Source of the DNA: Macrostomum lignano
Taxonomy: Eukaryota
Direction of reading: 5' to 3'
Length of the DNA: 64,000 nt
NCBI GenBank assembly: GCA_002269645.1
Contig: NIVC01002668.1
Coordinates: forward strand, 86,681 to 150,680
Position 1 is the stretch's first letter. Each line of letters begins with the position of its first letter. A program made the translations under genes and the position numbers. Below the pieces are notes generated by a model that worked only from the letters and a program-made list of their open reading frames with translations, ran no database searches and was not told the DNA's origin. Shown here one piece after another: positions 2,197 through 32,900 of the stretch.

Positions 2197-2671
2197 CATA
2201 TTCTTTTCCCACTGCTAGAATCAGTGCTAGTAGAGTCCCTAGATCAGTGCTAGTAGAGTCCCTAGATCAAGGCTAGAGGGACCTTACAAGTCCAAAAGAG
2301 TCTGCAGAGAGGATAGGATAAGACGCGAGAAGAGTGACAGTTACTGAGAAGCATCTGAGCATTTGCAACTAAGCCTACGAATTCTCATTAGGCGCGAGAG
2401 CCTATTGAGTCAGTATTAGAAATACCCGCTACTCGGAATCCAAAGACAGGCTTAAATCTGACCAGTTGATACAGGCAGGCGCGAATAATGAGCGGCATTG
2501 ATCTGTGAAATCTATTATTTTTGTCTATTTGCTTACATGAGCTTCTTTATTAATTGCGTCGAGCGGTACATTTGGCTTATGCGCGCATTGCATGCAGTAG
2601 CATTTAGCCTAGGTACTGCCGAAGCTGTGCGGCCGTATCATCGGTTGCATGGGATATCATGGTCTCTTCAC

Positions 2672-4265: not shown

Positions 4266-5586
<1,321 letters not shown>

Positions 5587-6864
5587 CAGAAAAAAGCAAT
5601 TTACATAGTTCACTATTGTTACTAATGTATTTTAACAACTAGATAATTAATATAATATGCCAATTATTCCATCAGATATATATTTAGTGTTTGGTATTTT
5701 ACACCACGACATTTTTCTAGCATAGGCAATTAAAGCAGTAAATAAAATACATATTGTCATGATTAAGTCGCTATAATAAAATTACAAAGCCATGAACTCA
5801 TCGGTGGCCATTATTATCTAAGTACAAGGGAGATAACAAAATATTGAAACCATGTGCCTGTGCATGTGCATCTATTCTAAGACTTTTGAACTGGTAGATG
5901 TGAGGTATTTTCAAATCCTAAAACATTTTTATTTGCATACATCATAATTAATTTTTCCTTTTCGCTTCACCAATATACCACAAACTTTTTGCCATACAAG
6001 AAAAGGAAAATGCTGTTTTTTTAATAAAACTTCCATGAAGGCATGAAGCGGATTCGCTACTAAAATTTGTGTACACAACAATACAACAATAAAAAAGTTT
6101 TCTAAGTTTCTATATAGTCAAACGTAATTTTGATATTGTTGTTTAAAGTACAAGAGCGCATAATCTCTTTGACTAATCAGAAGCTAGCAGCCAACAATAT
6201 GTGCATGTACAGCTGCTACACAAAATGATGACTGGTGAGCGCCTACTAAGCGGTAACGGCAAAATAAGCCAGATCCACGAAAAATGCGATAGCATAACTA
6301 AGTTAAAATGTAAAATAAAGCTGACCAACATGCAAATAGGCATATTTAAATAAAGTAAGAAAATATATAGAAAAAAATAAATCACTAGTAGAAATAATTA
6401 AGCAATTTCTTTTTTTGTAACAAAAAGTATAGGAACATTTGTTTAAAATGAGTTACTTTTTAGCCAAGATTTAACTCACACTAATTTAACGTACTGTTTT
6501 TTAAGTAATTCGAATTGCAGAGCTGAGATCTCTGAACAAAGCAGCAATAATGTGCCTGCCACGCTGCCAAGTACCAATTGCCAACAAAAAGAATACTTAC
6601 TTGTAAACTTAGCAGCAGGGACTGCTGTAAAATGGGACTAATGGAGAAAACATTGCGGTGTATTGGTGGTAATATAATAATATTATAATAATAATATTCC
6701 TGCTTGTTTGTTTTTTGGTTTTATATTATAGAAATTTAGGTCTCTGACTCTCTGGCTGACACAGGCACAGTTAACAGTTTTTTTCCATTTACTTACCTTT
6801 TGGCCTTTTCCATAATTTTGCTCATTTTAATCATTTTAGGCAAATCTTAATACTTTCTTAGCAA

Positions 6865-9873: not shown

Positions 9874-11432
9874 GGTTAGCATTAAATCAGCAAGAGGGAG
9901 GGGGCCTAGCCTAATAAGATCTATGCTTAGGATTAGAAGGTTAGACAAAGGCCTTTATTGTATGTGAAATTTTATAGTTTTTTGTTGGGCATGATTGTGA
10001 TTGTGATTATGATAATTATTACTAATGAAAATTTACATTTAGTGCCACACTTGAGATTTTAGTAGTAATTAGTAAATTTTAGTACTAAAATGTCAGGTGT
10101 TTTGCTAAATTGTTGCTAAAATGAAAATCATAATCTTGGATTTAAATTCTATAAGTCATGATTGTAAAAAAGTGTTATGAGATCACAATTTAATGATCAT
10201 GCTCTTGCATACATGCACAACCTCCAACATTCAGTCGGCCATGCAACTTAGTTTTAACAAAAATGCGACATAGATTTTGGCCAAAAAAGCAACTTACATG
10301 TAAAAAAACCTAATGCAAAATTAATGCAATTTTGGGTAAACGGCAGGAGTAACTATGACTTTCTTATTAAGTCAAAATGCCTCGTCAGATACTTAGTACT
10401 ACTACTTATTTATTCTACTTAGGTATTTTTCAGGTGCGAATTTTTGCAACTTCCTTGATTAGCCGCCAAATTGGTCAGCCTGATCGGCCAACTCGGCCGA
10501 CTGTTGTGCATGTATGCTTGTGATCATGCCTGACCCTTTCTCAGGATGCAAGGACTCTGGTTACTAGGCTATAGAGGGTCCTAGCAATGGAAAAGACAGA
10601 TCCTAAGCAATGGGCCCAAGATGACAAGACATTTTATCATGCAATATTTGTCTAAAGGACTATCTTAGAGAAGGACCATGTGGAAATTTGTCTGTTATAT
10701 ATGCAAACAAAGTTAAATAATAAATGAAATTCAAAAAATAAAATAGTAGTAGCTCCCCACCACAGTTTCTTTATGAAGTCTTCTAATGAAAGATAACAGT
10801 TTGTTATAATTCTAATAAAAGTTGTAAAATAAGTATATTTATATTATGTTATCTCCTTGATTCTATCCAGTCAATTTTTTAGCCAAGGTCTAAAGTGTGC
10901 TTTACTAGAAGCTTCCATTTGCTGTGCTAGACTCTAATCTCTTCCTATTATATATATTCTTACCTTTTATATTTGCCTCCATATCCATGTTTTGTATTCC
11001 ATTCATGCTTAATAGTAGGAATATCAAGCTTTTTTATAAAAATTATTTAAAACTACTTTAACTGGCTAGGTTAGCTAGGCTAGGTTGGCTAGGTTAGCTT
11101 ATATTCATATACTAGTATTATTTTTTTCAATCTACAATTTTTCAATTTCATAATTTCATGTGCTATTAAATTTTAAAAAATTGCCTTCAAATAAATTCAT
11201 ATAAGCTACTTAAATTTAATAAATGCAGAGTAATATATTTTAAACAGTAAATAAAATGCAATAGTCAGATTCAAAATAAGTTACTGATACAATTGATATA
11301 TATTACACAATAAGCATTGTAGATATCAATTATAGCAAATTAAAAAAGAAACTTCTGCTTATTAGTTGTATGCTTTATTCAACGCATGCCAAAAGCTATG
11401 CTCATCACAGTGTTGCACAGATACAAAAAGCC

Positions 11433-13660
11433 ATGAGCCATACCCAGTTGGACTTTTCCCACACTCAGCAGCAGTCCCTTGGCACCAGTCCAGGGATGGT
11501 GGCAGCTCTCTGCTGTCCGCTGTCTGCTTCAGAGAAGCGACAGAAGTTTCTTCATCGACTTGTCCATTTCCGGCACATGGACTTTGAGTATGCCCTGTGG
11601 CAGATGCTCTACCTATTTGTGTCGCCCCAGAAAGTCTATCGGAACTTTCAGTATAGAAAGCGTAAGTGAAGTTTTGCCTAGCATTGTGGTTCTATTTTGT
11701 ATGTTAGTATAGCACTGGATAGCTAGTGAATAATACTAAGACAAGTGATAGATAATTTAGAACAGTTAAGTAGGGCTATATCACAGGTATGGAAGGTAAT
11801 TGAATAGTTTGGGTAGGGTTATATTGATAGAGCAGGTGGACATGGTTATAGGAGAGGTGGACATGGTTATAGGACAGGTGAACATGGTTATAGGACAGAT
11901 GGTCAGGGTTATAGGACAGGTGGTCAGGGTTATAAGACAGGTGGTCAGGGTTATAGGACAGATGGTCAGTGTTATAAGACAGGTGGTCAGGGTTATAGGA
12001 CAGGTAGAAAGGGTTATAGGACAGGTAGAAATGGGTTATATGACAGGTGGACAGGGTTATAGGACAGGTGTACAGGGTTATAGGACGGGTGGACAGCGTT
12101 ATAGGACAGGTGGTCAGGGTTATAGGACAGGTGGTCAGGGTTATAGGACAGGTGGTCAGGGTTATAGGACAGGTTGTCAGGGTTATAAAACTGGACATGG
12201 TTATAGGACAGGTGAACAGGGTTATAGGACAGGTAGATAGGGTTGTAGGACAGGTGGACAGGGTTACAGGACAGATGGTCAGGGTTATAGGACAGGTGGT
12301 CAGGGTTATAAGACAGGTGGACAGGGTTATAGGACAGGTTGTCAGGGTTATAAAACTGGACATGGTTATAGGACAGGTGAACAGGGTTATAGGACAGATG
12401 GTCAGGGTTATAGGACAGGTGGTCAGGGTTACAGGACAGATGGTCAGGGTTATAGGACAGGTGGTCAGGGTTATAAGACAGGTGGACAGGGTTATAGGAC
12501 AGGTTGTCAGGGTTATAAAACTGGACATGGTTATAGGACAGGTGGACATGGTTATAGGGCAGGTGGACAGGGTTATAGGACAGGTGAAGAGGGCTATAGC
12601 ACGAATAAATATAAATATTTGTAATAAAAAAATTATAATACCAATTAAAACCTACTCTTTGCCACCTCAGAAACCCGAAACCAGTGGGCCCGCGATGACC
12701 CAGCCTTCCTAGTGCTGCTGTCGACCGTTCTGCTGGGCACTTCCCTGGTCTTCGGCCTGGTATTGCGCCTGTCATTCCTTGAGACTCTCAAACTGATGCT
12801 ATGGATTGTCTGCATCGACTGTATCGGCGTTGGCGTTGTCATAGCAACCATTTTCTGGCTGCTGGCCAACCGGGTATACCGGCTGCCCGGCTCTGCGCCC
12901 GCCCTGCAGGTGGAGTGGGCCTACGCCTTTGACGTGCACCTCAATGCCTTCTTTCCGCTGCTGGTGATTCTGCACCTCATCCAGCTGCCCTTTCTCTACC
13001 GTGAGTACCCTGGCTGGCGATTGGAATGACTGGCAGACAGACACAGACAGACAGGCAGGCAGTCAGACAGACAGACAGGCAGACAAAGATACAACCAGAC
13101 AGATGGGCAGGTACAGCAAGACACCAAGACTGGCTGAGGCAAATGGAAAAGCATATAGTAGACACACTAAAGCTGGTAACACAGACAGATGTATTGATTC
13201 TCAGACATGATCAGAGCCGGACTATTGAGCAGACAATCTCATAACAGAACTGAAGACAGACATGGCTATTAACAGTAGTTAGTAGCGTCACAGTGCACTG
13301 GTGCCCAAGGCTGATCCTCATGCAACGCTAACCCATTGCAGCCGTACTCTATCACGACTGGTTCGTCTCTTCACTATTGGGCAATCTGTTCTGGCTGGTG
13401 GCCATTGTCTATTACCTGTACATCACTTTTCTAGGATATCGAGGTAAAGCCTGTTGATTTTCGATACATATGGGCGATTCAAATTTCACAAAAAATTAAC
13501 TAAATATACATTTTCTCTCACAGCGCTAAGTTTCCTGCGCGGAGTGAACGCCATCCTGTACCCCATCACCCTGCTGTGCATCGTGTTCCTGGTGTCCGTG
13601 CTGCTCCGCTGGAATTTCACCAAGCTTCTGGCCGACTTCTACAAGTTTAGAATACGCTGA
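11433..13660 (+). CDS. UNC50: UNC-50 family Golgi membrane protein; join(11433..11661,12671..13000,13342..13443,13524..13660), 265 aa
   Basis: KFLHRLVHFRHMDFEYALWQMLYLFVSPQKVYRNFQYRKQTRNQWARDDPAFLVLL...VEWAYAFDVHLNAFFPLL...YITFLGY...WNFTKLLADFYKFR. All introns are GT-AG with matching phase, total 798 nt. The start codon could alternatively lie further upstream in the same frame. Confidence 0.93.
11832..12597. repeat. ~21-bp minisatellite GGTTATAGGACAGGTGGTCAG in UNC50 intron 1
   Basis: Tandem copies with higher-order variant blocks. Confidence 0.92.
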
Positions 13661-15790: not shown

Positions 15791-15908
15791 TCACCCCAGC
15801 AATCTCTGAGATTTTCTATCACTGGATTTTGTTTATTTCGAAATTCTTACAGTTTTACGGTAATGCTTTGTTCCTATTTCAGCAGTGAAAGGGCCATTGA
15901 CTCGTGTC

Positions 15909-18900
15909 ATGTCGACAGTGCTGGTGTGCATCGGCCAGTGCGGCAACCAGCTGGGCGCGGAGTACCTGTCGCATCAGCTCGCAGTTGAGCCCAGCGTTGT
16001 GTCCGACGCTCTGGGCAACGTCAGGGCAGTGTTTGTAGACTCTGAGCGGAAAGTGGTGCAGTCCATGTGCCGCAAGTATCCCGCCTTGCGAGGCAGAGTG
16101 CCAGATGCTAACTGCGTCACTGCCAGGTAGGTGACAACTAATCGTGGGATTCCCTTTGTTGAATTATGGGGATACCCCTTTTCACTCATCTATGGAGATT
16201 CCCCTTTTCACTGATCTATGGGGATTCCCCTTTTCACTGATCTATTGGGATTCCCCTTTTCACTGAAATGGGGATTCCCCTTTTCACTGATCTATAGGGA
16301 TTACCTTTTTCACTGATCTATGGGGATTCCCCTTTTCACTGATCTATGGGGATTCCCCTTTTCACTGAATTAAAGGGATTCCCCTTTTCACTAATCTATG
16401 GTGATTCCCATTTTCACTGATCTATGGGGATCTATGGGGATCTATGGGGATTTCCCTTTCACTGATCTAGGAGTATTCCTCTTTCTACTGGTAAATGAGG
16501 ATTCCCCTTTCTACTGATCAATGGAGATTCTCCTTTTCACTGATCTATGGGGATTCCCGTTTTCACTGATCTATTGGGATTCCCCTTTTCACTGATCTAT
16601 GTGATTCCCCTATTCACTGATCTATGGGGATTCCCCTTTTCACTAATCTATGGGGATTCCCCTTTTCACTGATATATTGGGATTCCCCTTTTCACTGATC
16701 TATGTGGATTCCCCTATTCACTGATCTATGGGGATTCCCGTTTTCACTGACCTATCTGGATTCCCTTTTTCACTGATCTATGGGGATTCCCCTTTTCACT
16801 GATCTATGGTGATTCCCCTTTTAACTGATCTATGGGGATTCCCGTTTTCACTGATCTATGGGGATTCCCCTTTTAACTGATCTATGGGGATTCCCGTTTT
16901 CACTGATCTATCTGGATTCCCTTTTTCACTGATCTATGGGGATTCCCCTTGTCACTGATCTATGGGGATTCCCCTTTTAACTGATCTATGGGGATTCCCG
17001 TTTTCACTGATCTATGGGGATTCCCCTTTTAACTGATCTATGGGGATTCCCCTTTTCACTGATTTATTGGGATTCCCCTTTTCACTAATCTGTGGGGCTC
17101 CCCTTAAGAATGAAACTTTAATGCCGAACCCCGACCGTCCCGCAGGCAGGGCCGCGGCAACAACTGGGCTTATGGCTACTCGGCTTCCGGCGACGAGGCG
17201 CTTTGCGCCGAACGCCTGGTTGACGACTGCATTCGCCGGGTTGGCGAGCAGTGCGACTATTTCTCTGGGGTGCTGCTGGCGCACTCGCTGGCCGGCGGCA
17301 CCGGCTCGGGCCTGGGCACCCGGCTGGCGGAGTGTGTCCGGGACAGCCTCGGACTGCAGCTGCTGGCGCACTGCTGCGTGCTGGCTGACAGGGACACCCC
17401 GCTGCAGAATTATAACAGCCTGCTGGCTCTGAGCCGCTTGGCTGGCCTGGCTGACTGCATGCTGCTTTATAGGAACTCTTCTGAGGCTTCTCCTGCTCAG
17501 GTGCGGCCCGCCTGTTGGGGCTGTGGGGGTCTTTGTGCTCAAGATTCTTAAGCATGGGTTTCTGAGTTTCTTTTCCCTGAAGTCATGAGTTCCTGAGTTT
17601 CTTTTCCTGAAGTCATGAGTTCCTGAGTTTCTTTTCTCTGAAGTAATGAGTTCCTGAGTTTCTTTTCCCTGAAGTCATGAGTTCCTGAGTTTCTTTTCCC
17701 TAAAGTCATGAGTTCCTGAGTTTCTTTTCCCTGAAGTCATGAGTTCCTGAGTTTCTTTTCCCTGAAGTCATGAGTTCCTGAGTTTCTTTTCCCTGAAGTC
17801 ATGAGTTCCTGAGTTTCTTTTCCCTGAAGTCATGAGTTCCCGAGTTTCTTTTCCCTGAAAGTGAATCTATGAGTTCCATCCATCACTGCATCCCCATTCC
17901 CCAGGTAAACTCCATCACTACATCCCCATTCCCCAGGTAAACTCCATCACTGCATCCCCATTCCCCAGGTAAACTCCATCACTGCATCCCCATTCCCCAG
18001 GTAAACTCCATCACTGCATCCCCATTCCCCAGGTAAACTCCATCACTGCATCCCCATTCCCCAGGTAAACTCCATCACTGCATCCCCATTCCCCAGGTAA
18101 ACTCCATCACTACATCCCCATTCCCCAGGTAAACTCCATCACTGCATCCCCAGGTAAACTCCATCACTGCATCCCCATTCCCAGGTAAACTCCATCACTA
18201 CATCCCCATTCCCCAGGTAAACTCCATCACTGCATCCCCAGGTAAACTCCATCACTGCATCCCCATTCCCCAGGTAAACTCCATCACTACATCCCCATTC
18301 CCCAGGTAAACTCCATCACTGCATCCCCAGGTAAAATCCATCACTGCATCCCCATTCCCCAGGTAAACTCCATCACTACATCCCCATTCCCCAGGTAAAC
18401 TCCATCACTGCATCCCCATTCCCCAGGTAAACTCCATCACTGCATCCCCATTCCCCAGGTAAACTCCATCACTGCATCCCTATTCCCCAGGTAAACTCCA
18501 TCACTACATCCCCATTCCCCAGGTAAACTCCATCACTGCATCCCCAGGTAAAATCCATCACTGCATCCCCATTCCCCAGGTAAACTCCATCACTGCATCT
18601 CCATTCCCCAGGTAAACTCCATCACTGCATCCCCATTCCCCAGGTAAACTCCATCACTGCATCCCCATTCCCCAGGTAAACTCCATCACTGCATCTCCAT
18701 TCCTTAGGTAAACTCCATCACTGCATCCCCATTCCCCAGGTAAACTCCATCACTGCATCCCCATTCCCCAGGTAAACTCCATCACTGCATCCCCATTCCC
18801 CAGGTAAACTCCATCACTGCATCCCCATTCCCCAGGTAAACTCCATCACTGCATCCCCATTCCCCAGGTAAACTCCATCACTGCATCCCCATTCCCCAGG

Positions 18901-20436
18901 TAAACTCCATCACTACATCCCCATTCCCCAGGTAAACTCCATCACTGCATCCCCAGGTAAACTCCATCACTGCATCCCCATTCCCCAGGTAAACTCCATC
19001 ACTACATCCCCATTCCCCAGGTAAACTCCATCACTGCATCCCCAGGTAAACTCCATCACTGCATCCCCATTCCCCAGGTAAACTCCATCACTACATCCCC
19101 ATTCCCCAGGTAAACTCCATCACTGCATCCCCAGGTAAAATCCATCACTACATCCCCATTCCCCAGGTAAACTCCATCACTACATCCCCATTCCCCAGGT
19201 AAACTCCATCACTGCATCCCCATTCCCCAGGTAAACTCCATCACTGCATCCCCATTCCCCAGGTAAACTCCATCACTGCATCCCCATTCCCCAGGTAAAC
19301 TCCATCACTACATCCCCATTCCCCAGGTAAACTCCATCACTGCATCCCCAGGTAAAATCCATCACTGCATCCCCATTCCCCAGGTAAACTCCATCACTGC
19401 ATCTCCATTCCCCAGGTAAACTCCATCACTGCATCCCCATTCCCCAGGTAAACTCCATCACTGCATCCCCATTCCCCAGGTAAACTCCATCACTGCATCT
19501 CCATTCCTTAGGTAAACTCCATCACTGCATCCCCATTCCCCAGGTAAACTCCATCACTGCATCCCCATTCCCCAGGTAAACTCCATCACTACATCCCCAT
19601 TCCCCAGGTAAACTCCATCACTGCATCCCCATTCCCCAGGTAAACTCCATCACTACATCCCCATTCCCCAGGTAAACTCCATCACTGCATCCCCATTCCC
19701 CAGGTAAACTCCATCACTGCATCCCCATTCCCCAGGTAAACTCCATCACTGCATCTCCATTCCCCAGGTAAACTCCATCACTGTATCTCCATTCCCCAGG
19801 TAAACTCCATCACTGCATCCCCAGGTAAACTCCATCGCTGCATCCCCAGGTAAACTCCATCACTGCATCTCCATTCCCCAGGTAAACGAGTCTGTCGCCA
19901 GCCACCTCAGCCGCCTGCTGTTCCCCTGTCGCAGCCTCTACAAGTCTTGTAGGCTGGGCGGCAATGAGCTGGCTGAACTCACCCGGTCCTGCTGCCCCCT
20001 GCCGGGTCTCAGCCTGCTCAGGACCGCCTCAGCCAACGACCTGCCCTGCCTGCTCCGCTGCCGGCCCCGCCCCGCCTCCACCGTGGCCGCCGTGGCGGTT
20101 CTCCGCTCGCCAAGCGGCTCAAAGATTCGAGCTCCGAAGTCCGCTGATTGCGACGCTTTGAAAGCCTACCTGCGACCCGTGGCTTACAATGCCTTCCCGG
20201 TGGATTACTGGATGGATTCCGGCTGGGGCGGCGGCGGTTCCAGCCTCACGTTGGCCTACAATTCCGTCTCCGTGGTGGACTGGCTGGTTCCCATAGCAAC
20301 TAAAAGTGCCGCCCAGCTGAGCGCGGGTGCCTACTTGCACCACTATGAGCGCTACTTGCCGGATGCCAGGGAGGCGCTGCGCCTGGTCTCCGTGCAGTTC
20401 GAGGATCTCATTGCTGGCTACCGGTCTATGCGCTGA
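15909..20436 (+). CDS. Divergent delta/zeta-class tubulin, best match zeta-tubulin; join(15909..16126,17146..17500,19882..20436), 375 aa
   Basis: IGQCGNQLG, AVFVDSERKV, GRGNNWAYGY, HSLAGGTGSGLG, PLQNYNSLL, RSCCPLPGL, YNAFPVDYW, GAYLHHYERY. DSExKV, GRGNN, SxCPxP and NxFPVxxW match recalled Xenopus zeta better than delta (DMEPKV, GSGNN). Intron phases are consistent, total 1128 nt. Confidence 0.85.
16145..17105. repeat. 26-bp minisatellite CTATGGGGATTCCCCTTTTCACTGAT filling tubulin intron 1
   Basis: Roughly 36 tandem copies. Confidence 0.93.
17560..17858. repeat. 31-bp minisatellite TGAGTTTCTTTTCCCTGAAGTCATGAGTTCC in tubulin intron 2
   Basis: About 9-10 tandem copies. Confidence 0.92.
17878..19887 (+). 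repeat. 32-bp minisatellite GTAAACTCCATCACTGCATCCCCATTCCCCAG (~60 copies, some 25-bp variants) overlapping the exon-3 acceptor
   Basis: Each unit starts GT and ends CAG. The last CAG (19881) is the real acceptor, and the exon begins GTAAACGAG. Confidence 0.95.
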
Positions 20437-21733: not shown

Positions 21734-23542
21734 ATGTGCAAAGCCAGGGATTGGCAGCAGGTGAGAACTGCGGCCTGTCTGTTCTGCTTTCTACTCTGCG
21801 TGCTGCTCAATGTGCACCTGCAGTCGGCTGCCGCTGCCGACTCGGCTGTCTACCGGACTAACCAGTCTCGAAGGCACCTGAATCTCATCATGCTGGAGTA
21901 CGGAGGCTCGAACAAGTCTGTGAATCTGCACGGTCTGGAGCGGCTCATGGTTCAGATTGGGCTGCTGAAAAACCAGACTGCTCAGCCGGTTGAGCACAAG
22001 GAGGAGCATGAGCATGAGCACGAAAATGAGCATGAGCACGAGATGGAGGCTAAACAGAGCGCAAATGAGACCGGCACTGTTAAAGAGGTCAGTATGATGC
22101 TATATTTTCAGATTTCACCGCCCTGAGGGCCTTGAGTACAGTATTGGCGCGATTGTATTCATGCTCAAGAGTCAGCGCATGGCTAATGGTGATGTCGAGT
22201 AACTGAGTAGTAGCGTGTGTATGGACAGACTCTCTTGCATGCTCCCTCATCAGTATAGGGGCAAGCGTAAAAACGTACACCCCAAACAGTACACAAATTG
22301 TTCTCAATTTCAGTTCTTAAGTCCTTCTAACCATTAGCTCTGTAGGCCTTGCTGATTTCACTTGGCTCCGCCTCCGCCTTCCTAACAGACACGTGTCTGT
22401 TCTTATCTGTTAGACTTTGTGGTAGGCGGGCTGGTCACGTGAGCAGCTCGTGCTCGTGTGCTCCGCCACAGCTGTTAATGCTAGCAGCAGGTTTATGCGC
22501 TATTCAACTTCATTGAACAATCTCTTCTCAAGTTCGAAAGAAATTTGTCATGTGACCGGCGGCTTGCTAGCATGCAAAAAAGTGCTCACAAAGAAGTACC
22601 AGTGCGTTAATTTAACGCCTTAATATTGGTGTTACCTTTTTCCGAGTGCTTTCTAGTTAACAAACAGCAGAAGCAGAAACCGGCTTGGGTGCAGTGTTGT
22701 AGATAAGTACAGGCCCCCCCCCTGTGCTTTCTTTCTTAGAAATAGTTAGCTTTATGACACAAAAATCAGGTGCTGCTCAAAGTCCACCTGTCAATCAGTC
22801 TGGTCTGTCTGCATACATTCCAGTTCATAAATAGTGTATCCTGTCCTGAAATCCTATTGAAAATTGCACAAGGTCCAAGCTGGAGTAGTTTTAGACCCTT
22901 GTAGCCATAGTTCCTTTCCTGCATCAGCTAATTCAAATCAACCGCTCAGGCCGTGTCTTTGTATTCTGCATATTTAATTAGCAATACAGTGCTCAAGCAG
23001 GAACTTGCCCTTTGGGAGCCTGCCGCCTCGGCACTGTGGTTTTTCCTCTTGAGCTCTTGAGCTGCTCAAATGCTATTTATAGCTTATAGATTGCTGGTCA
23101 GGAGAGAAAGTACGGAGAGCAGCCGAGTGGCTCCTTTCATTTTTAATTTGTCGTCGGCTAAAGCCTGCTCGCGTGCTGGCACCTAATCTTAGTTATTTCT
23201 CTGCTGCTTCCTTCCTGCGAGATCTTCCGAGAGGCGTCTTGCCACTTCAGCTTGTTTTTTGGCTGTGCCAATTTTGCTGCTTTTTTTCTTCTTGGAACGC
23301 ACAGGCACAGGACCTGTCAGCGAGCACTGGTCTGCCTGGCATCATCGATTGCTGGCCACCCACGCGTTTGCAGAGTTTGCTCAGGCCGTGTACTCAGGCC
23401 TCAGGGGTGATGGGCTTTAGGGACAGGCGTTCAGACCGTTTGTGTGGCTTGTCCCTGTCTTTTGGAAGGAATATGACAATAAAGTGGGTGTGATACAGAT
23501 GGATAAATCGATATATGGATAGACAGACAGATAGATAGATAA

Positions 23543-23615
<73 letters not shown>

Positions 23616-23768
23616 CAGATTGATAGATATACAGATAGATAGATAGATAGACAGATAGATAGATAGAAAGATAGATAGACATATAGATAGATAGACAGAC
23701 AGATAGATAGATAGATAGATAGATAGATGGATGGATGGATGGATAGATAGATAGATAGATAGATAGAC

Positions 23769-23803
<35 letters not shown>

Positions 23804-26791
23804 CAACAGGCAGACAGATAGATATATGATTTACTAGAGATTAACAAGTATTTAGCACAATATACAAGTTAATTCTCATGCATCCATCCTAAACGCCATG
23901 CTCAAATTCAACACTCAGAACAGCAGTATGACTCAGCGCCAGGTGCTGACTAAGGTCCCAAGCTTATAACCGCTATTTTCTCCTTGGCTGGCTCCCAGCC
24001 AGTCCCTCCTGTCTGCTAAGACCCTCGCTGACGTAATCATTTGAAACTCTTCCTTTCGTGTCGGATTACTGTACTGTAAATATTCCCAAAAGCTTGTAGG
24101 CATCAGTATTATGCATTATTATATACTATACTACCGGCTCTAAGGAGTTCCGCTGTTCGTGTCTTATTTCCTCATTAATCCTCTCCGGTGGACCCCCAAC
24201 CGTTCTTTTTTCAAGTCTAAAAACTGGGCCATCCCGCCTAGTGGTTCGCTACACTCTGCCTGCCTGACACGCATCGCCACTGTAAACTTGCTTTAAATAT
24301 AGTCAGCTCAGCACTGGACTGGCAATGAAAAGGAAAATCTTGAGAGAAAAAACGATACTTCTCTTGTGTCCTGCATGGCCCACTGTAGCCATCTGCTTCA
24401 AGTTTAATTTAAGCACTCACCTTTGATGGCCTGGATCCTGCGGATGAAATTAAAGGGCTTCAGGGCTTGGTGACGAAGATTTCTGCGGTGATTGCATGAG
24501 TTTAATGGGTTCAAGGGGTATTAGATGCATCCAGGGGGTATTAGATGCATCCAGGGGGTATTAGATGCATCCAGGGGGTATTAGATGCATCCAGGGGGTA
24601 TTAGATGCATCCAGGGGGTATTAAATGCATCCAGGGGTATTAGATGCATCCAGGGGTATTAGATGCATCCAGGGGGTATTAGATGCATCCAGGGGGTATT
24701 AGATGCATCCAGGGGGGTATTAGATGCATCCAGGGGGTATTAGATGCATCCAGGGGGGTATTAGATGCATCCAGGGGTATTAGATGCATCCAGGGGGTAT
24801 TAGATTCATCCAGGGGGTATTAGATGCATCCAGGGGGTATTAGATTCATCCAGGGGGTATTAGATGCATCCAGGGGGTATTCGATGCATCCAGGGGGTAT
24901 TAGATGCATCCAGGGGGTATTAGATGCATCCAGGGGGTATTAGATGCATCCAGGGGGTATTAGATGCATCCAGGGGGTATTAGATGCATCCAAGGGGTAT
25001 TAGATGCATCCAGAGGGTATTAAATGCATCCAGGAGGTATTGAATAGGTTCATGAGGGTATTGACTGGATTTAGCGGGGTATTGACTGGGTTCAGAGGGT
25101 ATTGACTGGGTTCAGGGGGTAGTGATTGGGTTCAGTGGGTATTAAATCAATTCAGGGGGTATGAAATCGGTTCAGAGGGTATTGAATTGGTTCAGAGGGT
25201 ATTAAATTGGTTCAGAGGGTATTAAATCGGTTCAGAGGGTATTAAATCTGTTCAGAGGGTATTGAATGGGTTCAGAGGGTATTAAATCGGTTCAGAGGGT
25301 ATTAAATCGGTTCAGAGGGTATTAAATCTGTTCAGAGGGTATTAACTTTAGAGGGTATTAAATCGATTCAATGCATTCTATAGGCTCAGATGATGTTAAC
25401 TTTGTTCAGTGCATAATTAATAGACTTTATTTTATTGTGTCATTTCACACGCGCATATATAACCGAAGCAATAATTGTTTAACGCTGCGCCCCTTCCGTC
25501 ACTTCCGCAGTGCCCCACAGCCAGGCAGATGCTGTCCTGGTACCCCAGCGGCCAGGCCTTTGGCAGCCTCACGGAGCCGGAATTTCTGGACCTCTGCCCG
25601 ACCCTGGTGTACCTGCTGCACTCCAAGGCCTGCAGCCGCGGCTCGACTCCCGACCCCGCCAAGCCGCCCGGTCGCACCTGGAAGGTGTGGGGCGCCTCCC
25701 TGCTGGCTGTTCTGATCACCAGCCTGGGCGGCGTGGCCACCATCTTCATCATCCGGCCGCTCATGCGGACCCGCTTCTACACTCTGGTGGTCCAGTTCCT
25801 CATCGCCCTGGCCGTCGGGTCTCTGAGCGGTGACGCCTTCCTGCACCTGCTGCCTCATGTGAGTCTGCGGTTCACCTGTGTGTCTGTGACTGCTGCCTCA
25901 TGTGAGTCCGCGGTTCACCTGTGTGTCTGTGACTGCTGCCTCATGTGAGTCTGCGGTTCACCTGTGTGTCTGTGACTGCTGCCTCATGTGAGTCCGCGGT
26001 TCACCTGTGTGTCTGTGACTGCTGCCTCATGTGAGTCTGCGGTTCACCTGTGTGTCTGTGACTGCTGCCTCATGTGAGTCTGCGGTTCACCTGTGTGTCT
26101 GTGACTGCTGCCTCATGCGAGTCTGCGGTTCACCTGTGTGTCTGTGACTGTTGCCTCATGTGAGTCTGCGGTTCACCTGTGTGTCTGTGACTGCTGCCTC
26201 ATGTGAGTCTGCGGTTCACCTGTGTGTCTGTGACTGCTGCCTCATGCGAGTCTGCGGTTTACCTGTGTGTCTGTGACTGTTGCCTCATGTGAGTCTGCGG
26301 TTCACCTGTGTGTCTGTGACTGCTGCCTCATGAGAGTCTGCGGTTTACCTGTGTGTCTGTGACTGCTGCCTCATGTGAGTCTGCGGTTTACCTGTGTGTC
26401 TGTGACTGCTGCCTCATGTGAGTCTGCGGTTCACCTGTGTCTGTGACTGCTGCCTCATGTGAGTCTGCGGTTTACCTGTGTGTCTGTGACTGCTGCCTCA
26501 TGTGAGTATGCGGTTTACCTGTGTGTCTGTGACTGCTGCCTCATGTGAGTCTGCGGTTCACCTGTGTGTCTGTGACTGCTGCCTCATGTGAGTCTGCGGT
26601 TTACCTGTGTGTCTGTGACTGCTGCCTCATGTGAGTCTGCGCTTCACCTGTGTGTCTGTGACTGCTGCCTCATGTGAGTCTGCGGTTTACCTGTGTGTCT
26701 GTGACTGCTGCCTCATGTGAGTCTGCGGTTTACCTGTGTGTCTGTGACTGCTGCCTCATGTGAGTCTGCGGTTCACCTGAGTCTGTCTGTC

Positions 26792-26838
<47 letters not shown>

Positions 26839-26913
26839 TTCTGTCTGTCTGTCTGTCTTTCTGTCTGTCTACCTGTATGTGTCTGTCCGTCTATCTGTCT
26901 GCCTTAGTGTCTG

Positions 26914-26958
<45 letters not shown>

Positions 26959-29900
26959 CTCTGTCTTCCTTAGTGTCTGTGTCTGTCTGCCCTTCTATCT
27001 ACCTGCCTGTCTTATTTGTCTTAGTGTGTCTGTCTGTCCGTTCGTCTGTCTGTTAGTGTGTGTGTATTTCTGTCTGCCAGTCTGTGCCAATCTGTACTCG
27101 CCTGTGATACCCCTGTCCCGCACTCCCGTTGGTTCAATGCTCTTATATTTGTCACCTGCGTCGGTGCAGAGGCACTGGGAGACGGCGCGATACTTAAAAG
27201 TTCATTTCGCCTTCAGCAGAAGCTACTGTCTGCTACCTTCTGCTTCCCTCAAGCCAGAAACTGGAGCAGCTGTACTCTTCAATAATAGTGCGTGTATATT
27301 TAGGATCAATACTTCTTTATATCTGGCCCCCAATCTCGTGAGATGATAAATTTAATGATAAATAAAGGCCGCAGTCACCCAGTCTGAAATTTCCTATTGT
27401 TTACTGAGCGTTAGGTTGTAGAGGAAATTCGTCTGAATAAGAATTTTTATTAATTCCTTTCGACCGCTTGCACCACTGTGTCTGGATTGCGATTTCCTCT
27501 CGTACCAGCGAGTGGGCGTTCCTGATTGAAGAGCTGCTTTGGCTGGCGGTGAATTAATTGAATGGTGGCCCGTGTTGTTGACTTTGATTTGATTAGTAAT
27601 TTTTTTTCGAATGCACCGGGTCCTTGTGTTTGTTCCTGTAAGGATCTGAGAGCTATTTTTGGACACTGCTTCTGACTGTTGACTGTCTTCCCTTTTCCCC
27701 AGATCCCAGCTGCTGGCCTGCTGGGCCAGCCTCCCAGATCCTCAATTGCTGGGCCAGCCTTCCAGAGTGTCAGTTGCTGGGCCAGCCTCCCAGAGTGTCA
27801 GTTGCTGGGCCAGCCTCCCAGAGTGTCAGTTGCTGGGCCACCAGCCTCCCAGATCCTCAGTTGCTGGGCCAGCCTCCCAGATCCTCAGTTGCTGGGCCAC
27901 CAGCCTCCCAGATCCTCAGTTGCTGGGCCAGCCTCCCAGATCCCCAGCTGCTGGGCCAGTCTCCCAGATCCTCAGTTGCTGGGTTAGCCTCCCAGAGTGT
28001 CAGTTGCTGGGCCACCAGCCTCCCAGATCCTCAGTTGCTGGGCCAGCCTTCCAGATCCTCAGTTGCTGGGCCACCAGCCTCCCAGATCCTCAGTTGCTGG
28101 GCCAGCCTCCCAGATCCCCAGCTGCTGGGCCAGTCTCCCAGATCCTCAGTTGCTGGGTTAGCCTCCCAGAGTGTCAGTTGCTGGGCCACCAGCCTCCCAG
28201 ATCCTCAGTTGCTGGGCCAGCCTCCCAGATCCTCAGTTGCTGGGCCACCAGCCTCCCAGATCCTCAGTTGCTGGGCCAGCCTCCCAGATCCCCAGCTGCT
28301 GGGCCAGCCTCCCAGATCCTCAGTTGCTGAGCCAGCCTCCCAGATCCTCAGTTGCTGGGCCACCAGCCTCCCAGATCCTCAGTTGCTGGGCCAGCCTCCC
28401 AGATCCCCAGCTGCTGGGCCAGCCTCCCAGATCCTCAGTTGCTGAGCCAGCCTCCCAGATCCTCAGTTGCTGGGCCACCAGCCTCCCAGATCCTCAGTTG
28501 CTGGGCCAGCCTCCCAGATCCTCAGTTGCTGAGCCAGCCTCCCAGATCCTCAGTTGCTGGGCCACCAGCCTCCCAGATCCTCAGTTGCTGGGCCAGCCTC
28601 CCAAATCCTCAGTCGGGAAGCTGTCTAAGCGGCAATCGCGCTAAGTGAAATCGATGTTGCTAATATATTCAAATAAATATAGTCTTGCAGAAGTTTCATT
28701 CAGAAGGGCCAAGTGTTTTTTTATAATTTTCAGTTTATCAACCCAATCACGAAAAAACATGCAATTAGGCACCTGCCAATCAAAGCCTTGTGTTTTTCTC
28801 TATGCATTTTTGTTTAGAATTCTAGGCCAGACTTTTTGTCCGGTTCGAATTGATTCTAATTATTCTGTAGCAGAGGCTTCCTTTTTTAAATCAATTTGTT
28901 TGCACTATTTACCTCTGTTTTTCCCTTTTAGCTCTCTTGGAAATTGCCTACATTTTTATTGCTTATTGATTTTTTCAGTGTAGTGCTCTACAAATCCCTA
29001 ATGCAGTTCCTACAAATCCCTAATGCAGTTCCTACAAATCCCTAATGCAGTTCCTACAAATCCCTAATGCAATTCCTACAAATCCCTAGTGCAGTTCCTA
29101 CAAATCCCTAATGCAGTTCCTACAAATCCCTAATGCAATTCCTACAAATCCCTAATGCAGTTCCTACAAATCCCTAATGCAGTTCCTACAAATCCCTAAT
29201 GCAGTTCCTACAAATCCCTAATGCAGTTCCTACAAATCCCTAATGCAGTTCCTACAAATCCCTAATGCAGTTCCTACAAATCCCTACTGCAGTTCCTACA
29301 AATCCCTAATGCAGTTCCTACAAATCCCTAATGCAGTTCCTACAAATCCCTAATGCAGTTCCTACAAATCCCTAATGCAGTTCCTACAAATCCCTAATGC
29401 AGTTCCTACAAATCCCTAATGCAGTTCCTACAAATCCCTAATGCAGTTTCTACAAATCCCTAATGCAGTTCCTACAAATCCCTAATGCAGTTCCTACAAA
29501 TCCCTAATGCAGTTTCTACAAATCCCTAATGCAGTTCCTACAAATCCCTAATGCAGTTCCTACATATCCCTAATGCAGTTCCTACATATCCCTAATGGAA
29601 TTCCTACAAATCCCTAATGCAGTTTCTACAAATCTCTAATGCAGTTCCTACAAATCCCTAATGCAGTTCCTACAAATCCCTAATGCAGTTCCTACAAATC
29701 CCTAATGCAGTTTCTACAAATCCCTAATGCAATTCCTACAAATCCCTAATATAGTTTTCTATAAATCTCTAATGTAGTTCCCTACAAATCCCTAATGTAG
29801 AGCCCTACAAATCCCTAATGTAGCGCCCTACAAATCCCTAATGTAGAGCCCTACAAATCCCTAATGTAGCGCCCTACAGATCCCTAACGTTGCGCCCTAC

Positions 29901-32900
29901 AAATCCCTACAAGTCTAATGCAGCCTGAGTGCCCGTGAACGGGAGTAGTGACACCGCACCCCAACCCCATCCCGCAGGCCCTGTTCCCAGAAGACGATCA
30001 CAAACACGAGCACAAGGAGGGCGGAGAGTCTGGCGGCCTGGACCACATGGCAACTATGTACCGCTGCCTGACCGCCCTGACTGGCATCTACTGTTTCTTC
30101 GTGATCGAGCGAATCACCGTGCTGTGCCAGAACCGGCGCAGCAGGCGAAGGAGCAGCTCTCGAAGGCCGGTGAGTTGAGAAGAGTTTAGCGGTATTTTCT
30201 AACAAAATGTTCAACACTTTTTGTCTTGGTCACAGCTACACTTTCTAAGCCTTAATGATATCTGCCTATCTATCTGTCCTGTGTTGCTCCAATGCAAAAA
30301 TTTCAGTTCTCTATCACCGCTGCACTGGTGCGTTTGAGGCGGATAAAAAAGAATTCGTTTATAAAAAAACAACAGCTAAGAAATTGATCATTTTTAGCTA
30401 GAACACAAAACATTCCATAGCTAATCCTAAATAAGTTACTATTTACACACGAGTTGTAGTTTTGCACTGTTAAATCTTTCTCCTTGTGCTGTGACTCAGT
30501 GTTGTGCATTAGATAGTAGGGGTGATTGATCATCTTAATTTATAAAGCTTGTGTTGTCTTACAATATAGTTTATTTGTTGCAGTATATGAAATATTTAGT
30601 TGAATGTTTATTTATCTAGCATGATGTTCTGTGTGGTAACTGCGCTGTTTAGTGTGTGTGATTTTTACATATAACTTTCTCACTTACATGAGATAGTGCT
30701 CATTTGCATTTAGTTTAGGGGGCCAGGGGCTTGGGTAGAGAGCGGAGAGTTGGGAGAAGGCGGAGAGGGTAGGGAAAAGGCGGAGAGGGTAGGGAAAGGG
30801 CGGAGAGGGTAGGGAAAGGGCGGAGAGGGTAGGGAAAGGGCGGAGAGGGTAGGGAAAGGCGGAGAGGGTAGGGAAAGGGCGGAGAGGGTAGGGAAAGGGC
30901 GGAGAGGGTAGGGAAAGGGCGGAGAGGGTAGGGAAAGGGCGGAGAGGGTAGGGAAAGGGCGGAGAGGGTAGGGAAAGGGCGGAGAGGGTAGGGAAAGGGC
31001 GGAGAGGGTAGGGAAAGGGCGGAGAGGGTAGGGAAAGGGCGGAGAGGGTAGGGAAAGGGCGGAGAGGGTAGGGAAAGGGCGGAGAGGGTAGGGAAAGGGC
31101 GGAGAGGGTAGGGAAAGGGCGGAGAGGGTAGGGAAAGGGCGGAGAGGGTAGGGAAAGGGCGGAGAGGGTAGGGAAAGGGCGGAGAGGGTAGGGAAAGGGC
31201 GGAGAGGGTAGGGAAAGGGCGGAGAGGGTAGGGAAAGGGCGAAGAGGGTAGGGAAAGGGCGGAGAGGGTAGGGAAAATGCGGAGAGGGTAGGGAAAATTC
31301 GGAGAGGGTAGGGAAAGGGCGGAGAGGGTAGGGAAAGGGCGGAGAGGGTAGGGAAAATGCGGAGAGGGTAGGGAAAATGCGGAGAGGGTAGGGAAAGGGC
31401 GGAGAGGGTAGGGAAAATGCGGAGAGGGTAGGGAAAAGGCGGAGAGGGTAGGGAAAGGGCGGAGAGGGTAGGGAAAGGGCGGAGAGGGTAGGGAAAGGGC
31501 GGAGAGGGTAGGGAAAGGGCGGAGAGGGTAGGGAAAATGCGGAGAGGGTAGGGAAAGGGCGGAGAGGGTAGGGAAAATGCGGAGAGGGTAGGGAAAGGGC
31601 GGAGAGGGTAGGGAAAATGCGGAGAGTGAGCTTTACGACTTTATTTACAGAAGGTGCCGCGGCCAGTGATTTAATTGATAAATCACCACTACGTTCTTAG
31701 AATAATTTATTGCTGATCCATTTTTAGTCCTGTTGACCGTCCGGGGCAGTCCATCAGCAGCTGATCAACAAGTTGTGTAGAAATTTGCCAGCTAAATATA
31801 GAACACTGACTGCCTGCAGACCGAGGCTTGCTTATCACCCGGTCCTGTGGAAGAGTGGCTTTTGAAAGCTCAGGCGCCGCTGTCAGCCTCCGCTCCCAAC
31901 AACCTCCCACAAAAAGATGATGGGTTTCGTGAGAAGCCGACTGGAAACAGAGGCGGAGAGATAATGCTCTCGCTAGACAGCTTCTCTTCCTCATCATTCG
32001 CGTCACCGAATTCCCGAAAGGGCTGTCCGAAGAAGACCCTGAATGAGGCATTTCTGCTTTGAAAGAAAGAGTCGATTGGCCTCTTCAATTAGCCGCGTTT
32101 GATTGTCTTCTGAGCAGGGGGGGGGGGCAGCTGCTTATTAGATGGCGAAGGCTTCGAAGGCGGTGTATGAACGCGTCCAACACCCGACACTCCCCTGGTT
32201 CGATCTGTGCTCGAAAATTGGCCTGGAGGTTGTCGTACGGTTCACAGCCGTGAGGGCCTTCAATGGCGTTAATTGCACAAGCAGAGCCAAGCCGAGATTC
32301 CAATTTAGCCCCAAAATTACTGTGACAGAACTTTAAATCGAGGCCTGGGCGGCTGGCACATCAGAGTCGCACTCCTAATAGATTAGAAAGTTCCCCTCCT
32401 GTGCGTATTTGTATTTCTTAGCAACAGTCAACTTACTCTCGCCTTATGTATTGTATTGAGTTGATTGATTTTGTTTACAAACTTTGCAGCAATCCAATTC
32501 TTCCAATGTTGGCGAGAAGTTGTGCAATCCGTTCCATCGGTCCTATGCCAACCTGACCGGGGGCGCTCAGCGTGAGTTCTGCTCTGCTATCATTAACCTG
32601 CTTGCTGCTGGCTTTGGAATCCGTCTTTTGAATCCCCCCCCCTGAACCCACTAGAAATCGCCCCCTGACCCCACTAGAAATCGCCCCCTGACCCCACTAG
32701 AAATCGCCCCCTGACCCCACTAAAAATCGCCCCCTGACCGCACTAAGAATCTCCCTCTGAACCCACTAAAAATCGCCCTCTGACCCCACTAAGAATCGCC
32801 CTCTGACCCCACTAAGAATCGCCCTCTGACCCCACTAAGAATCTCCCACTGACCCCACTAGAAATCGCCCCCTGACCCCACTAAAAATCGCCCCCTGACC

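What the first reader, a model, noticed from the sequence alone, without database searches (positions are those of the whole stretch)
15909..20436. Compact zeta-tubulin rather than delta-tubulin
Seen: a 375-aa tubulin, clearly shorter than typical tubulins, with DSERKV, GRGNNWAYGY, RSCCPLP and YNAFPVDYW. Established: zeta-tubulin belongs to the zeta/epsilon/delta module, localises to the basal foot of multiciliated cells in Xenopus and is lost in placental mammals. Inference: this is an invertebrate zeta orthologue that automated pipelines would likely label delta. It appears to lack ~20 aa near the exon 2/3 junction. The ciliary GTPase ARL3 lies ~10 kb away.
Basis: partly seen in the sequence, partly recalled or inferred. 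Interest (0 to 1): 0.7.

Follow-up and report, generated by a model that had tools for sequence, protein, structure and literature searches.

The report
Shortened zeta-tubulin gene of a flatworm
The window carries a three-exon gene of the flatworm Macrostomum lignano that encodes a fast-evolving, unusually short (375 aa) zeta-tubulin, a known basal-body tubulin that databases routinely mislabel as delta. The flatworm has a separate, ordinary delta-tubulin gene.

Summary
Exons 15909-16126, 17146-17500 and 19882-20436 (+), all with GT-AG borders, give exactly 375 aa and contain all four quoted motifs. The protein is identical to GenBank PAA56069.1 ('hypothetical protein', M. lignano), whose gene models come from RNA-seq.

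The zeta reading is supported.
- The best relatives are the ~420-aa family found in frogs (including Xenopus), fish, reptiles, marsupials and marine invertebrates. No placental mammal or bird appeared among its top 120 hits.
- Profile scores are 235 bits for zeta against 129 for delta, and each half of the protein favours zeta. Beta-tubulin controls lean slightly towards delta.
- Neighbour-joining bootstraps keep it outside the delta clade in 97-100% of replicates and on the zeta side in 72-83%.
- The genome has a canonical delta-tubulin (P0118, E 1e-112 to vertebrate TUBD1, three copies).

The shortness is real. A second, syntenic genomic copy has the same 1128-nt coding sequence, and no hidden exon exists. 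The protein lacks helix H6 with most of the H6-H7 loop (about 21 aa, just upstream of the exon 2/3 junction), about 15 aa around H9, and a few residues in the H1-S2 loop. AlphaFold still gives a confident tubulin fold. Ciona zeta shows the same H6 loss.

ARL3 lies 10.3 kb upstream, with UNC-50 between them, and nothing links the two genes. This is a new, divergent member of a known family.

The parts
15897..15908 (+). Annotated 5' end of the transcript (5' UTR, in frame with the ATG). An in-frame TAA lies at 15861-15863, and a possible (trans-)splice acceptor 'tttcag' ends at 15882.
   Evidence: The L001 gene starts at locus position 10001, which is window 15897. Sequence read.
15909..16126 (+). 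Exon 1, residues 1-73 (phase 2 at its end): T1 loop GQCGNQ, H1, a shortened H1-S2 loop, and T2 VDSERKV.
   Evidence: tblastn of eight zeta proteins hits this exon.
16127..17145 (+). Intron 1 (GT..AG), filled by a 26-bp minisatellite of about 37 copies at 16165-17105. It is 456 bp in the paralogous copy.
17146..17500 (+). Exon 2, residues 73-191: T3 GRGNNWAYGY, T4 AGGTGSG, T5 ..TPLQNYN, S6 and T6 'YRN'. Helix H6 is missing between 'YRNSS' and 'EASPAQ'.
17501..19881 (+). Intron 2 (GT..AG): 52 bp of unique sequence, a 31-bp array (17553-17859) and a 32-bp array of 65 copies (17879-19887). The 32-bp unit is a copy of the 3' splice site plus the first 6 nt of exon 3. No hidden exon. It is 949 bp in the paralogous copy.
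19882..20436 (+). Exon 3, residues 192-375 plus TGA: H7 (VNESVASHL..), T7/H8 with both acidic residues (GGNELAEL), CPLP, a shortened H9 region, YNAFPVDYW, and H11-H12.
4266..5613 (-). Neighbour, not part of the gene: ARL3 orthologue (two of its exons seen as ORFs).
   Evidence: Pfam Arf. PDB search gives ARL3 204 bits against ARL2 123 bits.
11391..13660 (+). Neighbour between ARL3 and the tubulin: UNC-50 family gene.
   Evidence: Called gene in L001. Pfam UNC-50.
21734..34155 (+). Downstream neighbour: ZIP (SLC39-type) zinc transporter gene with long repeat-filled introns. The 3' limit was not determined.

Best explanation
The gene encodes the Macrostomum lignano orthologue of zeta-tubulin (TUBZ1). 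With delta- and epsilon-tubulin, zeta forms the 'ZED' group of tubulins found only in organisms with centrioles and cilia.

Shown:
- It is a tubulin with intact nucleotide-binding loops T1 to T5.
- The T6 and H7 asparagines are present, and so are both acidic residues of T7/H8.
- It belongs with zeta and not delta.
- The genome keeps a separate delta gene.
- It is present in two near-identical syntenic genomic copies, and the deposited gene model comes from RNA-seq.
- It has lost helix H6 and part of the H9 region, yet is still predicted to fold confidently as a tubulin.

Inferred:
- It binds GTP.
- It does not build a canonical microtubule lattice, because the segments it lacks sit at protofilament contact surfaces. 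Zeta-tubulins are in any case not known to polymerise.
- By analogy with Xenopus, it acts as an accessory tubulin at basal bodies or the basal foot of the multiciliated epidermis, together with delta and epsilon.

The short length most likely reflects fast, lineage-specific erosion of dispensable surface elements. Ciona zeta shows the same H6 loss.
For: Gene model and motifs.

Identity and transcript-based annotation. PMC5730564 states that the GenBank annotation NIVC01 derives from a genome-guided RNA-seq assembly.

Family placement:
- Two searches (a word-prefiltered homologue search, and an exhaustive representative search) rank first the ~420-aa family of fish, amphibians and Nematostella, with E 1e-42 to 1e-43 (names).
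- That family contains Xenopus and seven marsupials. No placental mammal or bird appeared in its top 120 hits. This matches the zeta distribution described in PMC4202323 and PMC10707541.
- HMM scores are zeta 235.4 against delta 129.0 bits. The N half differs by +52 and the C half by +54. Three beta-tubulin controls give -14 to -22. M. lignano delta gives -302.
- Neighbour-joining bootstraps exclude it from the delta clade in 200/200 replicates and in 97-100% of four later sets. It falls on the zeta side in 74% and in 72-83%.
- 38 of the 48 residues invariant in 18 metazoan zeta-tubulins are kept.

Separate delta gene: P0118, E 2e-112 and 40-44% identity over 96% of its length to vertebrate TUBD1 including placental mammals. 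Copies P0476 and P0477 also exist.

The shortness is real:
- The second copy, L002, has the same three exons and 6 nucleotide differences.
- Zeta proteins hit only the three exons in the window.

Fold:
- AlphaFold gives pLDDT 91.4 and pTM 0.92, with S6 joined to H7 by a 5-residue loop.
- A Xenopus zeta control has H6 at residues 188-199.
- Foldseek gives TM 0.80-0.85 to beta-tubulins.
- Ciona zeta has 11 residues where M. lignano has 9 and typical zeta has 30.
Against: - The branch is long: 33% mean identity to other metazoan zeta-tubulins, against 35-48% among the others.
- In 4-15% of bootstrap replicates the protein is sister to the whole delta clade. Placement specifically with metazoan zeta is weak (16-54%).
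- No epsilon-tubulin was in the tree, and only distance methods were available.
- Ten of the 48 residues otherwise invariant in zeta are changed or deleted, including W277, K262 and W391.
- The two genomic copies differ by only 3 synonymous and 3 non-synonymous changes, too few to show purifying selection.
- I saw no RNA-seq reads myself. Expression rests on the provenance of the GenBank models.
- No X-box or other ciliary promoter motif was found upstream.
- Function and localisation are entirely by analogy with Xenopus.
Confidence: 0.85

Rival explanations
1. It is a decaying zeta-tubulin: a gene under relaxed selection on its way to loss. It may still be transcribed but no longer acts as a tubulin.
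For: - It is the shortest metazoan zeta seen, with loss of H6, part of the H9 region and 10 of 48 residues invariant in the family.
- It sits on a long branch.
- Half of the six differences between the two copies change the amino acid.
- Zeta has been lost many times in evolution (PMC4202323).
Against: - Both genomic copies have intact 375-codon frames and canonical splice sites.
- All GTP-binding loops and both acidic T7/H8 residues are retained.
- 79% of invariant residues are kept, the same as the annelid Dimorphilus at 80%.
- The AlphaFold model is confident.
- Ciona zeta shows the same H6 loss. That argues for a tolerated variant, although I did not test whether the Ciona protein is itself functional.
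Confidence: 0.1
2. It is a highly divergent delta-tubulin paralogue, or an early offshoot of the delta lineage, and not a zeta orthologue.
For: In 3-15% of bootstrap replicates it is sister to the delta clade. Delta and zeta are sister families and always form one supergroup (PMC4202323).
Against: - It was excluded from the delta clade in 97-100% of replicates.
- The delta HMM scores 106 bits lower than the zeta HMM, in both halves of the protein.
- It carries the zeta signatures GRGNNWA, TPLQxYN, CPxP and NxFPxDxW, not delta's GSGNNWA and GEVxVQxYN.
- The genome already has canonical delta copies.
Confidence: 0.03
3. The short length is an artefact of the gene model or the assembly: an exon is hidden or lost inside the repeat-filled intron 2.
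For: Intron 2 is almost wholly minisatellite and such arrays are hard to assemble. The missing H6 segment lies close to the exon 2/3 junction.
Against: - Two independent contigs give the same exons and the same junctions, although their repeat numbers differ.
- Eight zeta proteins and the M. lignano delta find no extra coding piece anywhere in the window.
- The gap lies inside exon 2, about 8 codons before the donor site.
- The second shortening lies inside the continuous exon 3.
- The deposited models derive from RNA-seq.
Confidence: 0.02

Closest known systems
Zeta-tubulin (TUBZ1/Tub6) of Xenopus and other vertebrates other than placental mammals and birds (Findeisen et al. 2014, PMC4202323; Turk et al. 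2015, cited in PMC4741028)
   Same: - Best sequence matches at 34-37% identity over nearly the whole length.
- Shared signatures: GQCGNQ, GRGNNWAYGY, (S/T)PLQxYN, CPxP, NxFPxDYW and AYLHxY.
- Same fold in AlphaFold models.
- It coexists with a separate delta-tubulin in the same genome.
   Different: - 375 aa instead of 419-425 aa.
- No H6 helix and a much shorter H6-H7 loop.
- About 15 aa fewer around H9, including the invariant Trp.
- 10 of 48 family-invariant residues changed or deleted.
- Two introns instead of about ten, neither at a position shared with the Lingula or Owenia zeta genes.
- Function untested.
Invertebrate zeta-tubulins (Nematostella A7RI16, Lingula, Owenia, Lineus, Asterias, Branchiostoma, Trichoplax)
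   Same: Same family by HMM and tree. Nematostella is the single best hit, at 164 bits. All are mislabelled 'tubulin delta chain(-like)'.
   Different: Those proteins are 40-48% identical to one another on average and 406-421 aa long. The M. lignano protein is about 33% identical to them and 375 aa long.
Ciona intestinalis and Dimorphilus gyrociliatus zeta-tubulins (fast-evolving lineages)
   Same: The H6 segment is shortened or lost: 11 residues in Ciona and 18 in Dimorphilus, against 9 here. Dimorphilus keeps only 80% of the residues invariant in the other species.
   Different: They keep the H9 region and are 401-422 aa long. They do not group specifically with M. lignano, so the losses look independent.
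Delta-tubulin (TUBD1/UNI3), including M. lignano P0118
   Same: It is the sister family of zeta, has the same overall fold, and is found only in organisms with centrioles or cilia.
   Different: Delta scores 106 bits lower for this protein. It has different T3 and T5 signatures, a longer H1-S2 loop and a longer H9-S8 insertion. M. lignano's own delta is only 31% identical to the window protein, over 67% of the window protein's length.

Membership tests
Tubulin superfamily | Tubulin/FtsZ GTPase domain with T1 (GQCGNQ), T3 (GxGNNWA) and T4 (GGTGSG) loops and a two-domain tubulin fold | tested here: met
   Pfam PF00091, E 1.1e-26. Motifs read. AlphaFold pLDDT 91.4, and Foldseek TM 0.80-0.85 to beta-tubulins.
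Zeta-tubulin | Closer to zeta than to delta or any other tubulin class by profile comparison | tested here: met
   Zeta HMM 235.4 against delta HMM 129.0 bits, with both halves agreeing. Beta controls lean slightly towards delta. Solved gamma- and beta-tubulins score 62-74 bits. No epsilon profile was available.
Zeta-tubulin | Falls within the zeta clade in a phylogeny that also holds delta and an outgroup | tested here: met
   Neighbour-joining with a beta-tubulin outgroup, two alignments, two distance corrections and two gap filters. On the zeta side in 72-83% of replicates; excluded from delta in 97-100%; sister to delta in 3-15%. Support is moderate. No likelihood method and no epsilon sequences were used.
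Zeta-tubulin | Family-invariant residues and signatures (GRGxNWA, SPLQxYN, CPxP, WNPFPxDxW, AYLHW) | tested here: met
   38 of 48 columns invariant in 18 metazoan zeta-tubulins are kept, 8 are substituted and 2 are deleted. YNAFPVDYW stands for WNPFPxDxW, and AYLHH for AYLHW.
Zeta-tubulin | Distinct from, and in animals coexisting with, a bona fide delta-tubulin in the same genome | tested here: met
   P0118, P0476 and P0477 are M. lignano delta-tubulins, E 2e-112 to TUBD1 orthologues.
Zeta-tubulin | Complete secondary-structure set of a tubulin, including helix H6 and the H6-H7 loop | tested here: not met
   9 residues lie between the T6 Asn and the H7 Asn, against a median of 30. S6 joins H7 directly in the model, whereas the Xenopus control has H6 at 188-199. 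This feature describes typical members. It does not define the family: Ciona zeta also lacks it.
Zeta-tubulin / ZED module | Epsilon-tubulin present in the same genome | not tested
Planarians are reported to have epsilon and delta (PMC4799839).
Zeta-tubulin | Localises to the basal foot of multiciliated cells, as in Xenopus | not testable with these tools
   Known only from Xenopus (PMC4741028).
Delta-tubulin | Best profile match to delta, and delta signatures GSGNNWA and GEVxVQxYN | tested here: not met
   The delta HMM is 106 bits below the zeta HMM. The protein has GRGNNWA and DTPLQNYN.

The most novel reading that the evidence does not exclude
A functional zeta-tubulin can do without helix H6 and much of the H9 region, both of which lie at polymer contact surfaces in alpha/beta-tubulin. 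The same H6 loss arose independently in Macrostomum and Ciona. If so, zeta-tubulin acts as a non-polymerising, GTP-binding module, and the M. lignano protein is a natural minimal version suited to structural and transgenic study in a flatworm whose whole epidermis is multiciliated.
Probability: 0.45. Interest if true: 0.4.

Novelty: new member of a known kind. Interest (0 to 1): 0.3.

Why it matters
Zeta is the least studied tubulin class. The papers I read describe its localisation only in Xenopus, and no delta, epsilon or zeta structure turned up in my PDB searches (also stated in PMC10707541).

M. lignano is transparent, transgenic and amenable to RNAi, and its whole epidermis is multiciliated (PMC4799839). 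It evidently keeps both delta and zeta, so their proposed interchangeability could be tested there.

The naturally shortened protein, together with the parallel H6 loss in Ciona, marks out which parts of the tubulin fold zeta may be able to do without.

In practice, this gene should be annotated as zeta-tubulin. The widespread 'tubulin delta chain-like' labels on zeta orthologues are misleading for anyone counting delta and zeta across genomes.

None of this overturns current knowledge. Zeta in marine invertebrates was already reported.

Tried and rejected
1. Hidden exon in intron 2. tblastn of eight zeta proteins and the M. lignano delta against the whole window found only the three exons. 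The intron is 52 bp of unique sequence plus two minisatellites.
2. Assembly artefact. Rejected, because a second contig carries the same coding sequence.
3. Whole-exon loss as the cause of the H6 gap. The Lingula and Owenia zeta genes have about 11 exons, but none matches the missing segment, and neither M. lignano intron lies at one of their positions.
4. Selection test between the two copies. Only 6 differences (3 synonymous, 3 not), so it is uninformative.
5. A solved delta, epsilon or zeta structure for comparison or as an outgroup. None appeared in the three PDB searches. I took beta-tubulin sequences from the printed alignments instead.
6. Epsilon-tubulin as an outgroup, and as a test for a complete ZED set in M. 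lignano.
7. A ciliary (RFX X-box) motif upstream of the gene. None found: the nine matches in the window all lie in a tandem array at 27829-28553.
8. Literature on this gene or on zeta-tubulin in flatworms. No paper held mentions the gene identifiers, and none of the three papers that mention both zeta-tubulin and planarians is about zeta-tubulin in flatworms, judging by title and abstract. Turk et al. 2015 is not held.
9. Closer relatives, such as other flatworm zeta-tubulins. The exhaustive search found nothing between 100% and about 39% identity.
10. A functional link to ARL3. The two are separated by UNC-50 and 10 kb. I found nothing that links them, and treat the proximity as coincidence.
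Full report
WHAT IS THERE. The region 15909-20436 of the + strand holds a three-exon gene (exons 15909-16126, 17146-17500 and 19882-20436). Both introns have GT-AG borders, and the joined exons give an open frame of 1128 nt, or 375 aa plus a TGA stop. Pfam recognises the Tubulin/FtsZ GTPase domain at residues 4-184, E 1.1e-26.

The introns are almost entirely minisatellites. Intron 1 holds a 26-bp unit in about 37 copies. Intron 2 holds a 31-bp unit in 10 copies and a 32-bp unit in 65 copies.

SOURCE AND STATUS OF THE GENE MODEL. The protein is 100% identical to GenBank PAA56069.1, 'hypothetical protein BOX15_Mlig023198g1, partial', from the flatworm Macrostomum lignano, contig NIVC01002668.1. 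The GenBank protein differs only by four in-frame 5' UTR residues. The first ATG gives MSTV..., which matches the MSxV start of its homologues. The GenBank annotation of this assembly was built from a genome-guided RNA-seq transcriptome (PMC5730564). The identical deposited model is therefore indirect evidence that the gene is transcribed and spliced as proposed. I did not see reads myself.

A second copy, PAA71669.1 on contig NIVC01001149.1, lies in the same gene order (UNC-50, tubulin, ZIP transporter). It has the same three exons and the same 1128-nt coding sequence with 6 differences, 3 synonymous and 3 not. Its introns are shorter (456 and 949 bp against 1019 and 2381 bp) and are made of the same repeats. 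This fits the known redundancy of the assembly, which has 180 Mb in blocks at least 95% identical, and its 15% content of simple and tandem repeats.

DELTA OR ZETA.
1. Two searches (a word-prefiltered homologue search and an exhaustive representative search) rank first a family of about 420-aa proteins, with E 1e-42 to 1e-43 and 35-39% identity. It includes fish, amphibians and Nematostella.
2. A search seeded with the frog member of that family returns Xenopus tropicalis and X. laevis, reptiles, sharks, bony fish and seven marsupials, including the tammar wallaby. It also returns Lingula, Owenia, Lineus, Tubulanus, Branchiostoma, Asterias, Glandiceps and Liolophura. No placental mammal and no bird is in the top 120. 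This is the distribution published for zeta-tubulin (PMC4202323; PMC10707541). Several of these species also have a separate, longer delta-tubulin.
3. I built profile HMMs from 14 metazoan zeta-tubulins and 14 metazoan delta-tubulins. The window protein scores 235.4 bits on zeta and 129.0 on delta. The N-terminal half differs by +52 bits and the C-terminal half by +54. Three beta-tubulins used as neutral controls score 14-22 bits better on delta, so the zeta profile is not simply the more generic one. M. lignano's own delta scores -302.
4. Neighbour-joining trees were rooted with beta-tubulin sequences read from PDB alignments. In the first set the delta clade excluded the protein in 200 of 200 bootstrap replicates, and it grouped with all zeta sequences in 147 of 200. 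With more taxa, a different alignment method, two gap filters and two distance corrections, it was on the zeta side in 72-83% of replicates. It was excluded from delta in 97-100% and was sister to the whole delta clade in 4-15%. Support is moderate because the branch is long.
5. It keeps 38 of the 48 residues invariant in 18 metazoan zeta-tubulins, and it carries zeta signatures, not delta ones.

SEPARATE DELTA GENE. M. lignano has a canonical delta-tubulin (P0118, 473 aa). It matches vertebrate TUBD1 orthologues, placental mammals included, at E 2e-112 and 40-44% identity over 96% of its length. Two further genomic copies exist.

WHY IT IS SHORT. I measured segment lengths against the zeta profile.
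- Between the T6 asparagine and the H7 asparagine the protein has 9 residues. The median is 30 in 202 zeta-type sequences (minimum 11), and 21 in delta and beta-tubulin.
- Between the CPxP motif and the conserved Arg after S8 it has 35 residues, against a median of 50.
- The H1-S2 loop is about 4 residues shorter by this measure, and about 8 in the pairwise view.

AlphaFold2, run with a 66-sequence alignment, gives a confident model (mean pLDDT 91.4, pTM 0.92). In it strand S6 runs into helix H7 through a five-residue loop. The Xenopus tropicalis zeta control, run the same way (pLDDT 91.9), has H6 at residues 188-199 followed by a 15-residue loop. Foldseek matches the M. lignano model to beta-tubulins with TM 0.80-0.85.

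The H6 gap lies inside exon 2, about eight codons before the donor site, and the second gap lies inside exon 3. Neither is a splicing artefact. Zeta proteins find no further coding piece in the window.

The GTP-binding loops T1 to T5, both base-contacting asparagines, and the two acidic residues aligned with beta D251 and alpha E254 are all retained. Ciona intestinalis zeta has 11 residues in place of H6, and Dimorphilus has 18. Erosion of H6 therefore recurs in fast-evolving lineages.

HOW IT MOST LIKELY WORKS. Shown: this is a zeta-type tubulin with an intact nucleotide pocket and a confident predicted fold, present in two genomic copies alongside delta. Inferred from the family: it is a GTP-binding accessory tubulin that does not polymerise, acting at basal bodies of multiciliated cells. 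In Xenopus, zeta localises to the basal foot (PMC4741028), and the whole epidermis of M. lignano is multiciliated (PMC4799839). Loss of H6 and shortening around H9 remove surfaces that alpha/beta-tubulin uses for lattice contacts, which fits a role outside a lattice.

The main rival is a gene decaying under relaxed selection. The evidence is against it but cannot exclude it, because the two copies are too alike to measure selection.

COMPARISON AND NOVELTY. Zeta-tubulin in marine invertebrates is already documented. Findeisen et al. list 24 metazoan zeta-tubulins. No paper held mentions this gene, and none of the three that mention both zeta-tubulin and planarians is about zeta-tubulin in flatworms, judging by title and abstract. 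The finding is therefore a new and unusually divergent, shortened member of a known family.

NEIGHBOURHOOD. ARL3 is real, at 4266-5613 on the - strand, scoring 204 bits to ARL3 structures against 123 to ARL2. It lies 10.3 kb away, with a UNC-50 gene (11391-13660) in between. A ZIP zinc transporter gene follows downstream. No X-box motif precedes the tubulin gene. I see no evidence of a functional cluster.

LIMITS.
- Only distance trees were possible, and no epsilon sequences were available.
- Only indirect evidence of expression is available.
- Presence of epsilon in M. lignano was not checked.
- No other flatworm zeta-tubulin was available.

Noticed in passing
window 17879-19887 (intron 2 and the first 6 nt of exon 3); L002 about 11560-11993: The 32-bp minisatellite unit (TCCATCACTGCATCCCCATTCCCCAG|GTAAAC, 65 copies) is a copy of the intron 2 acceptor plus the first two codons of exon 3. 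Every unit therefore carries an acceptor directly abutting a donor-like GTAAAC, like a recursive splice site. Splicing to any internal copy would read VNSITASPFPR and then stop. The paralogous copy has only about 17 units, alternating between GGTAAAC and GGGCAAC variants. How the last acceptor is chosen is unexplained, as is whether internal ones are re-spliced.
   Followed up: partly
L002 (NIVC01001149.1) 10016-12548, compared with window 15909-20436: A second, syntenic copy of the whole UNC-50 / zeta-tubulin / ZIP block exists. Its coding sequence is 99.5% identical (6 of 1128 nt differ) but its intronic repeat numbers are very different. This fits the duplicated chromosome of the sequenced DV1 line. 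Minisatellite copy number changes much faster than the coding sequence.
   Followed up: yes
P0266 (Ciona intestinalis) and P0247 (Dimorphilus gyrociliatus), compared with window exon 2: Ciona zeta-tubulin lacks helix H6 much as the M. lignano protein does (11 against 9 residues between the two conserved Asn), and Dimorphilus is intermediate (18). The loss looks independent in fast-evolving lineages.
   Followed up: partly
Database names of the proteins: Zeta-tubulin orthologues across animals are systematically named 'tubulin delta chain' or 'delta chain-like', and a few 'tubulin beta chain-like', in NCBI and UniProt. Name-based counts of delta and zeta would be wrong.
   Followed up: yes
window 4266-5613 (-), 11391-13660 (+), 21734-34155 (+): Neighbouring genes are ARL3 (two exons seen), a UNC-50 family gene and a ZIP/SLC39 zinc transporter with very long repeat-filled introns.
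   Followed up: partly
window 27829-28553: Nine exact matches to the RFX X-box consensus (GTGGCCCAGCAAC) against 0.66 expected by chance. All lie in one tandem array inside the ZIP gene region, so they are probably a by-product of the repeat and not regulatory sites.
   Followed up: no
window 1819-2253, 11776-12775, 15196-15758, 20463-21141, 23417-23847, 26717-27346, 33130-36126: Many further minisatellite arrays produce long spurious ORFs of repeated peptides (HQRRQ, LSYNPDH, IYLS, MSSIKTY and others). This is typical of the genome, of which 15% is simple or tandem repeat. The 25-bp array starts 27 bp after the tubulin stop codon.
   Followed up: no
L003 (Lingula) and L004 (Owenia) zeta-tubulin loci: The Lingula and Owenia zeta genes share about ten intron positions with each other. 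M. lignano has only two introns and neither coincides with theirs, which suggests massive intron loss plus new or shifted introns in the flatworm lineage.
   Followed up: partly
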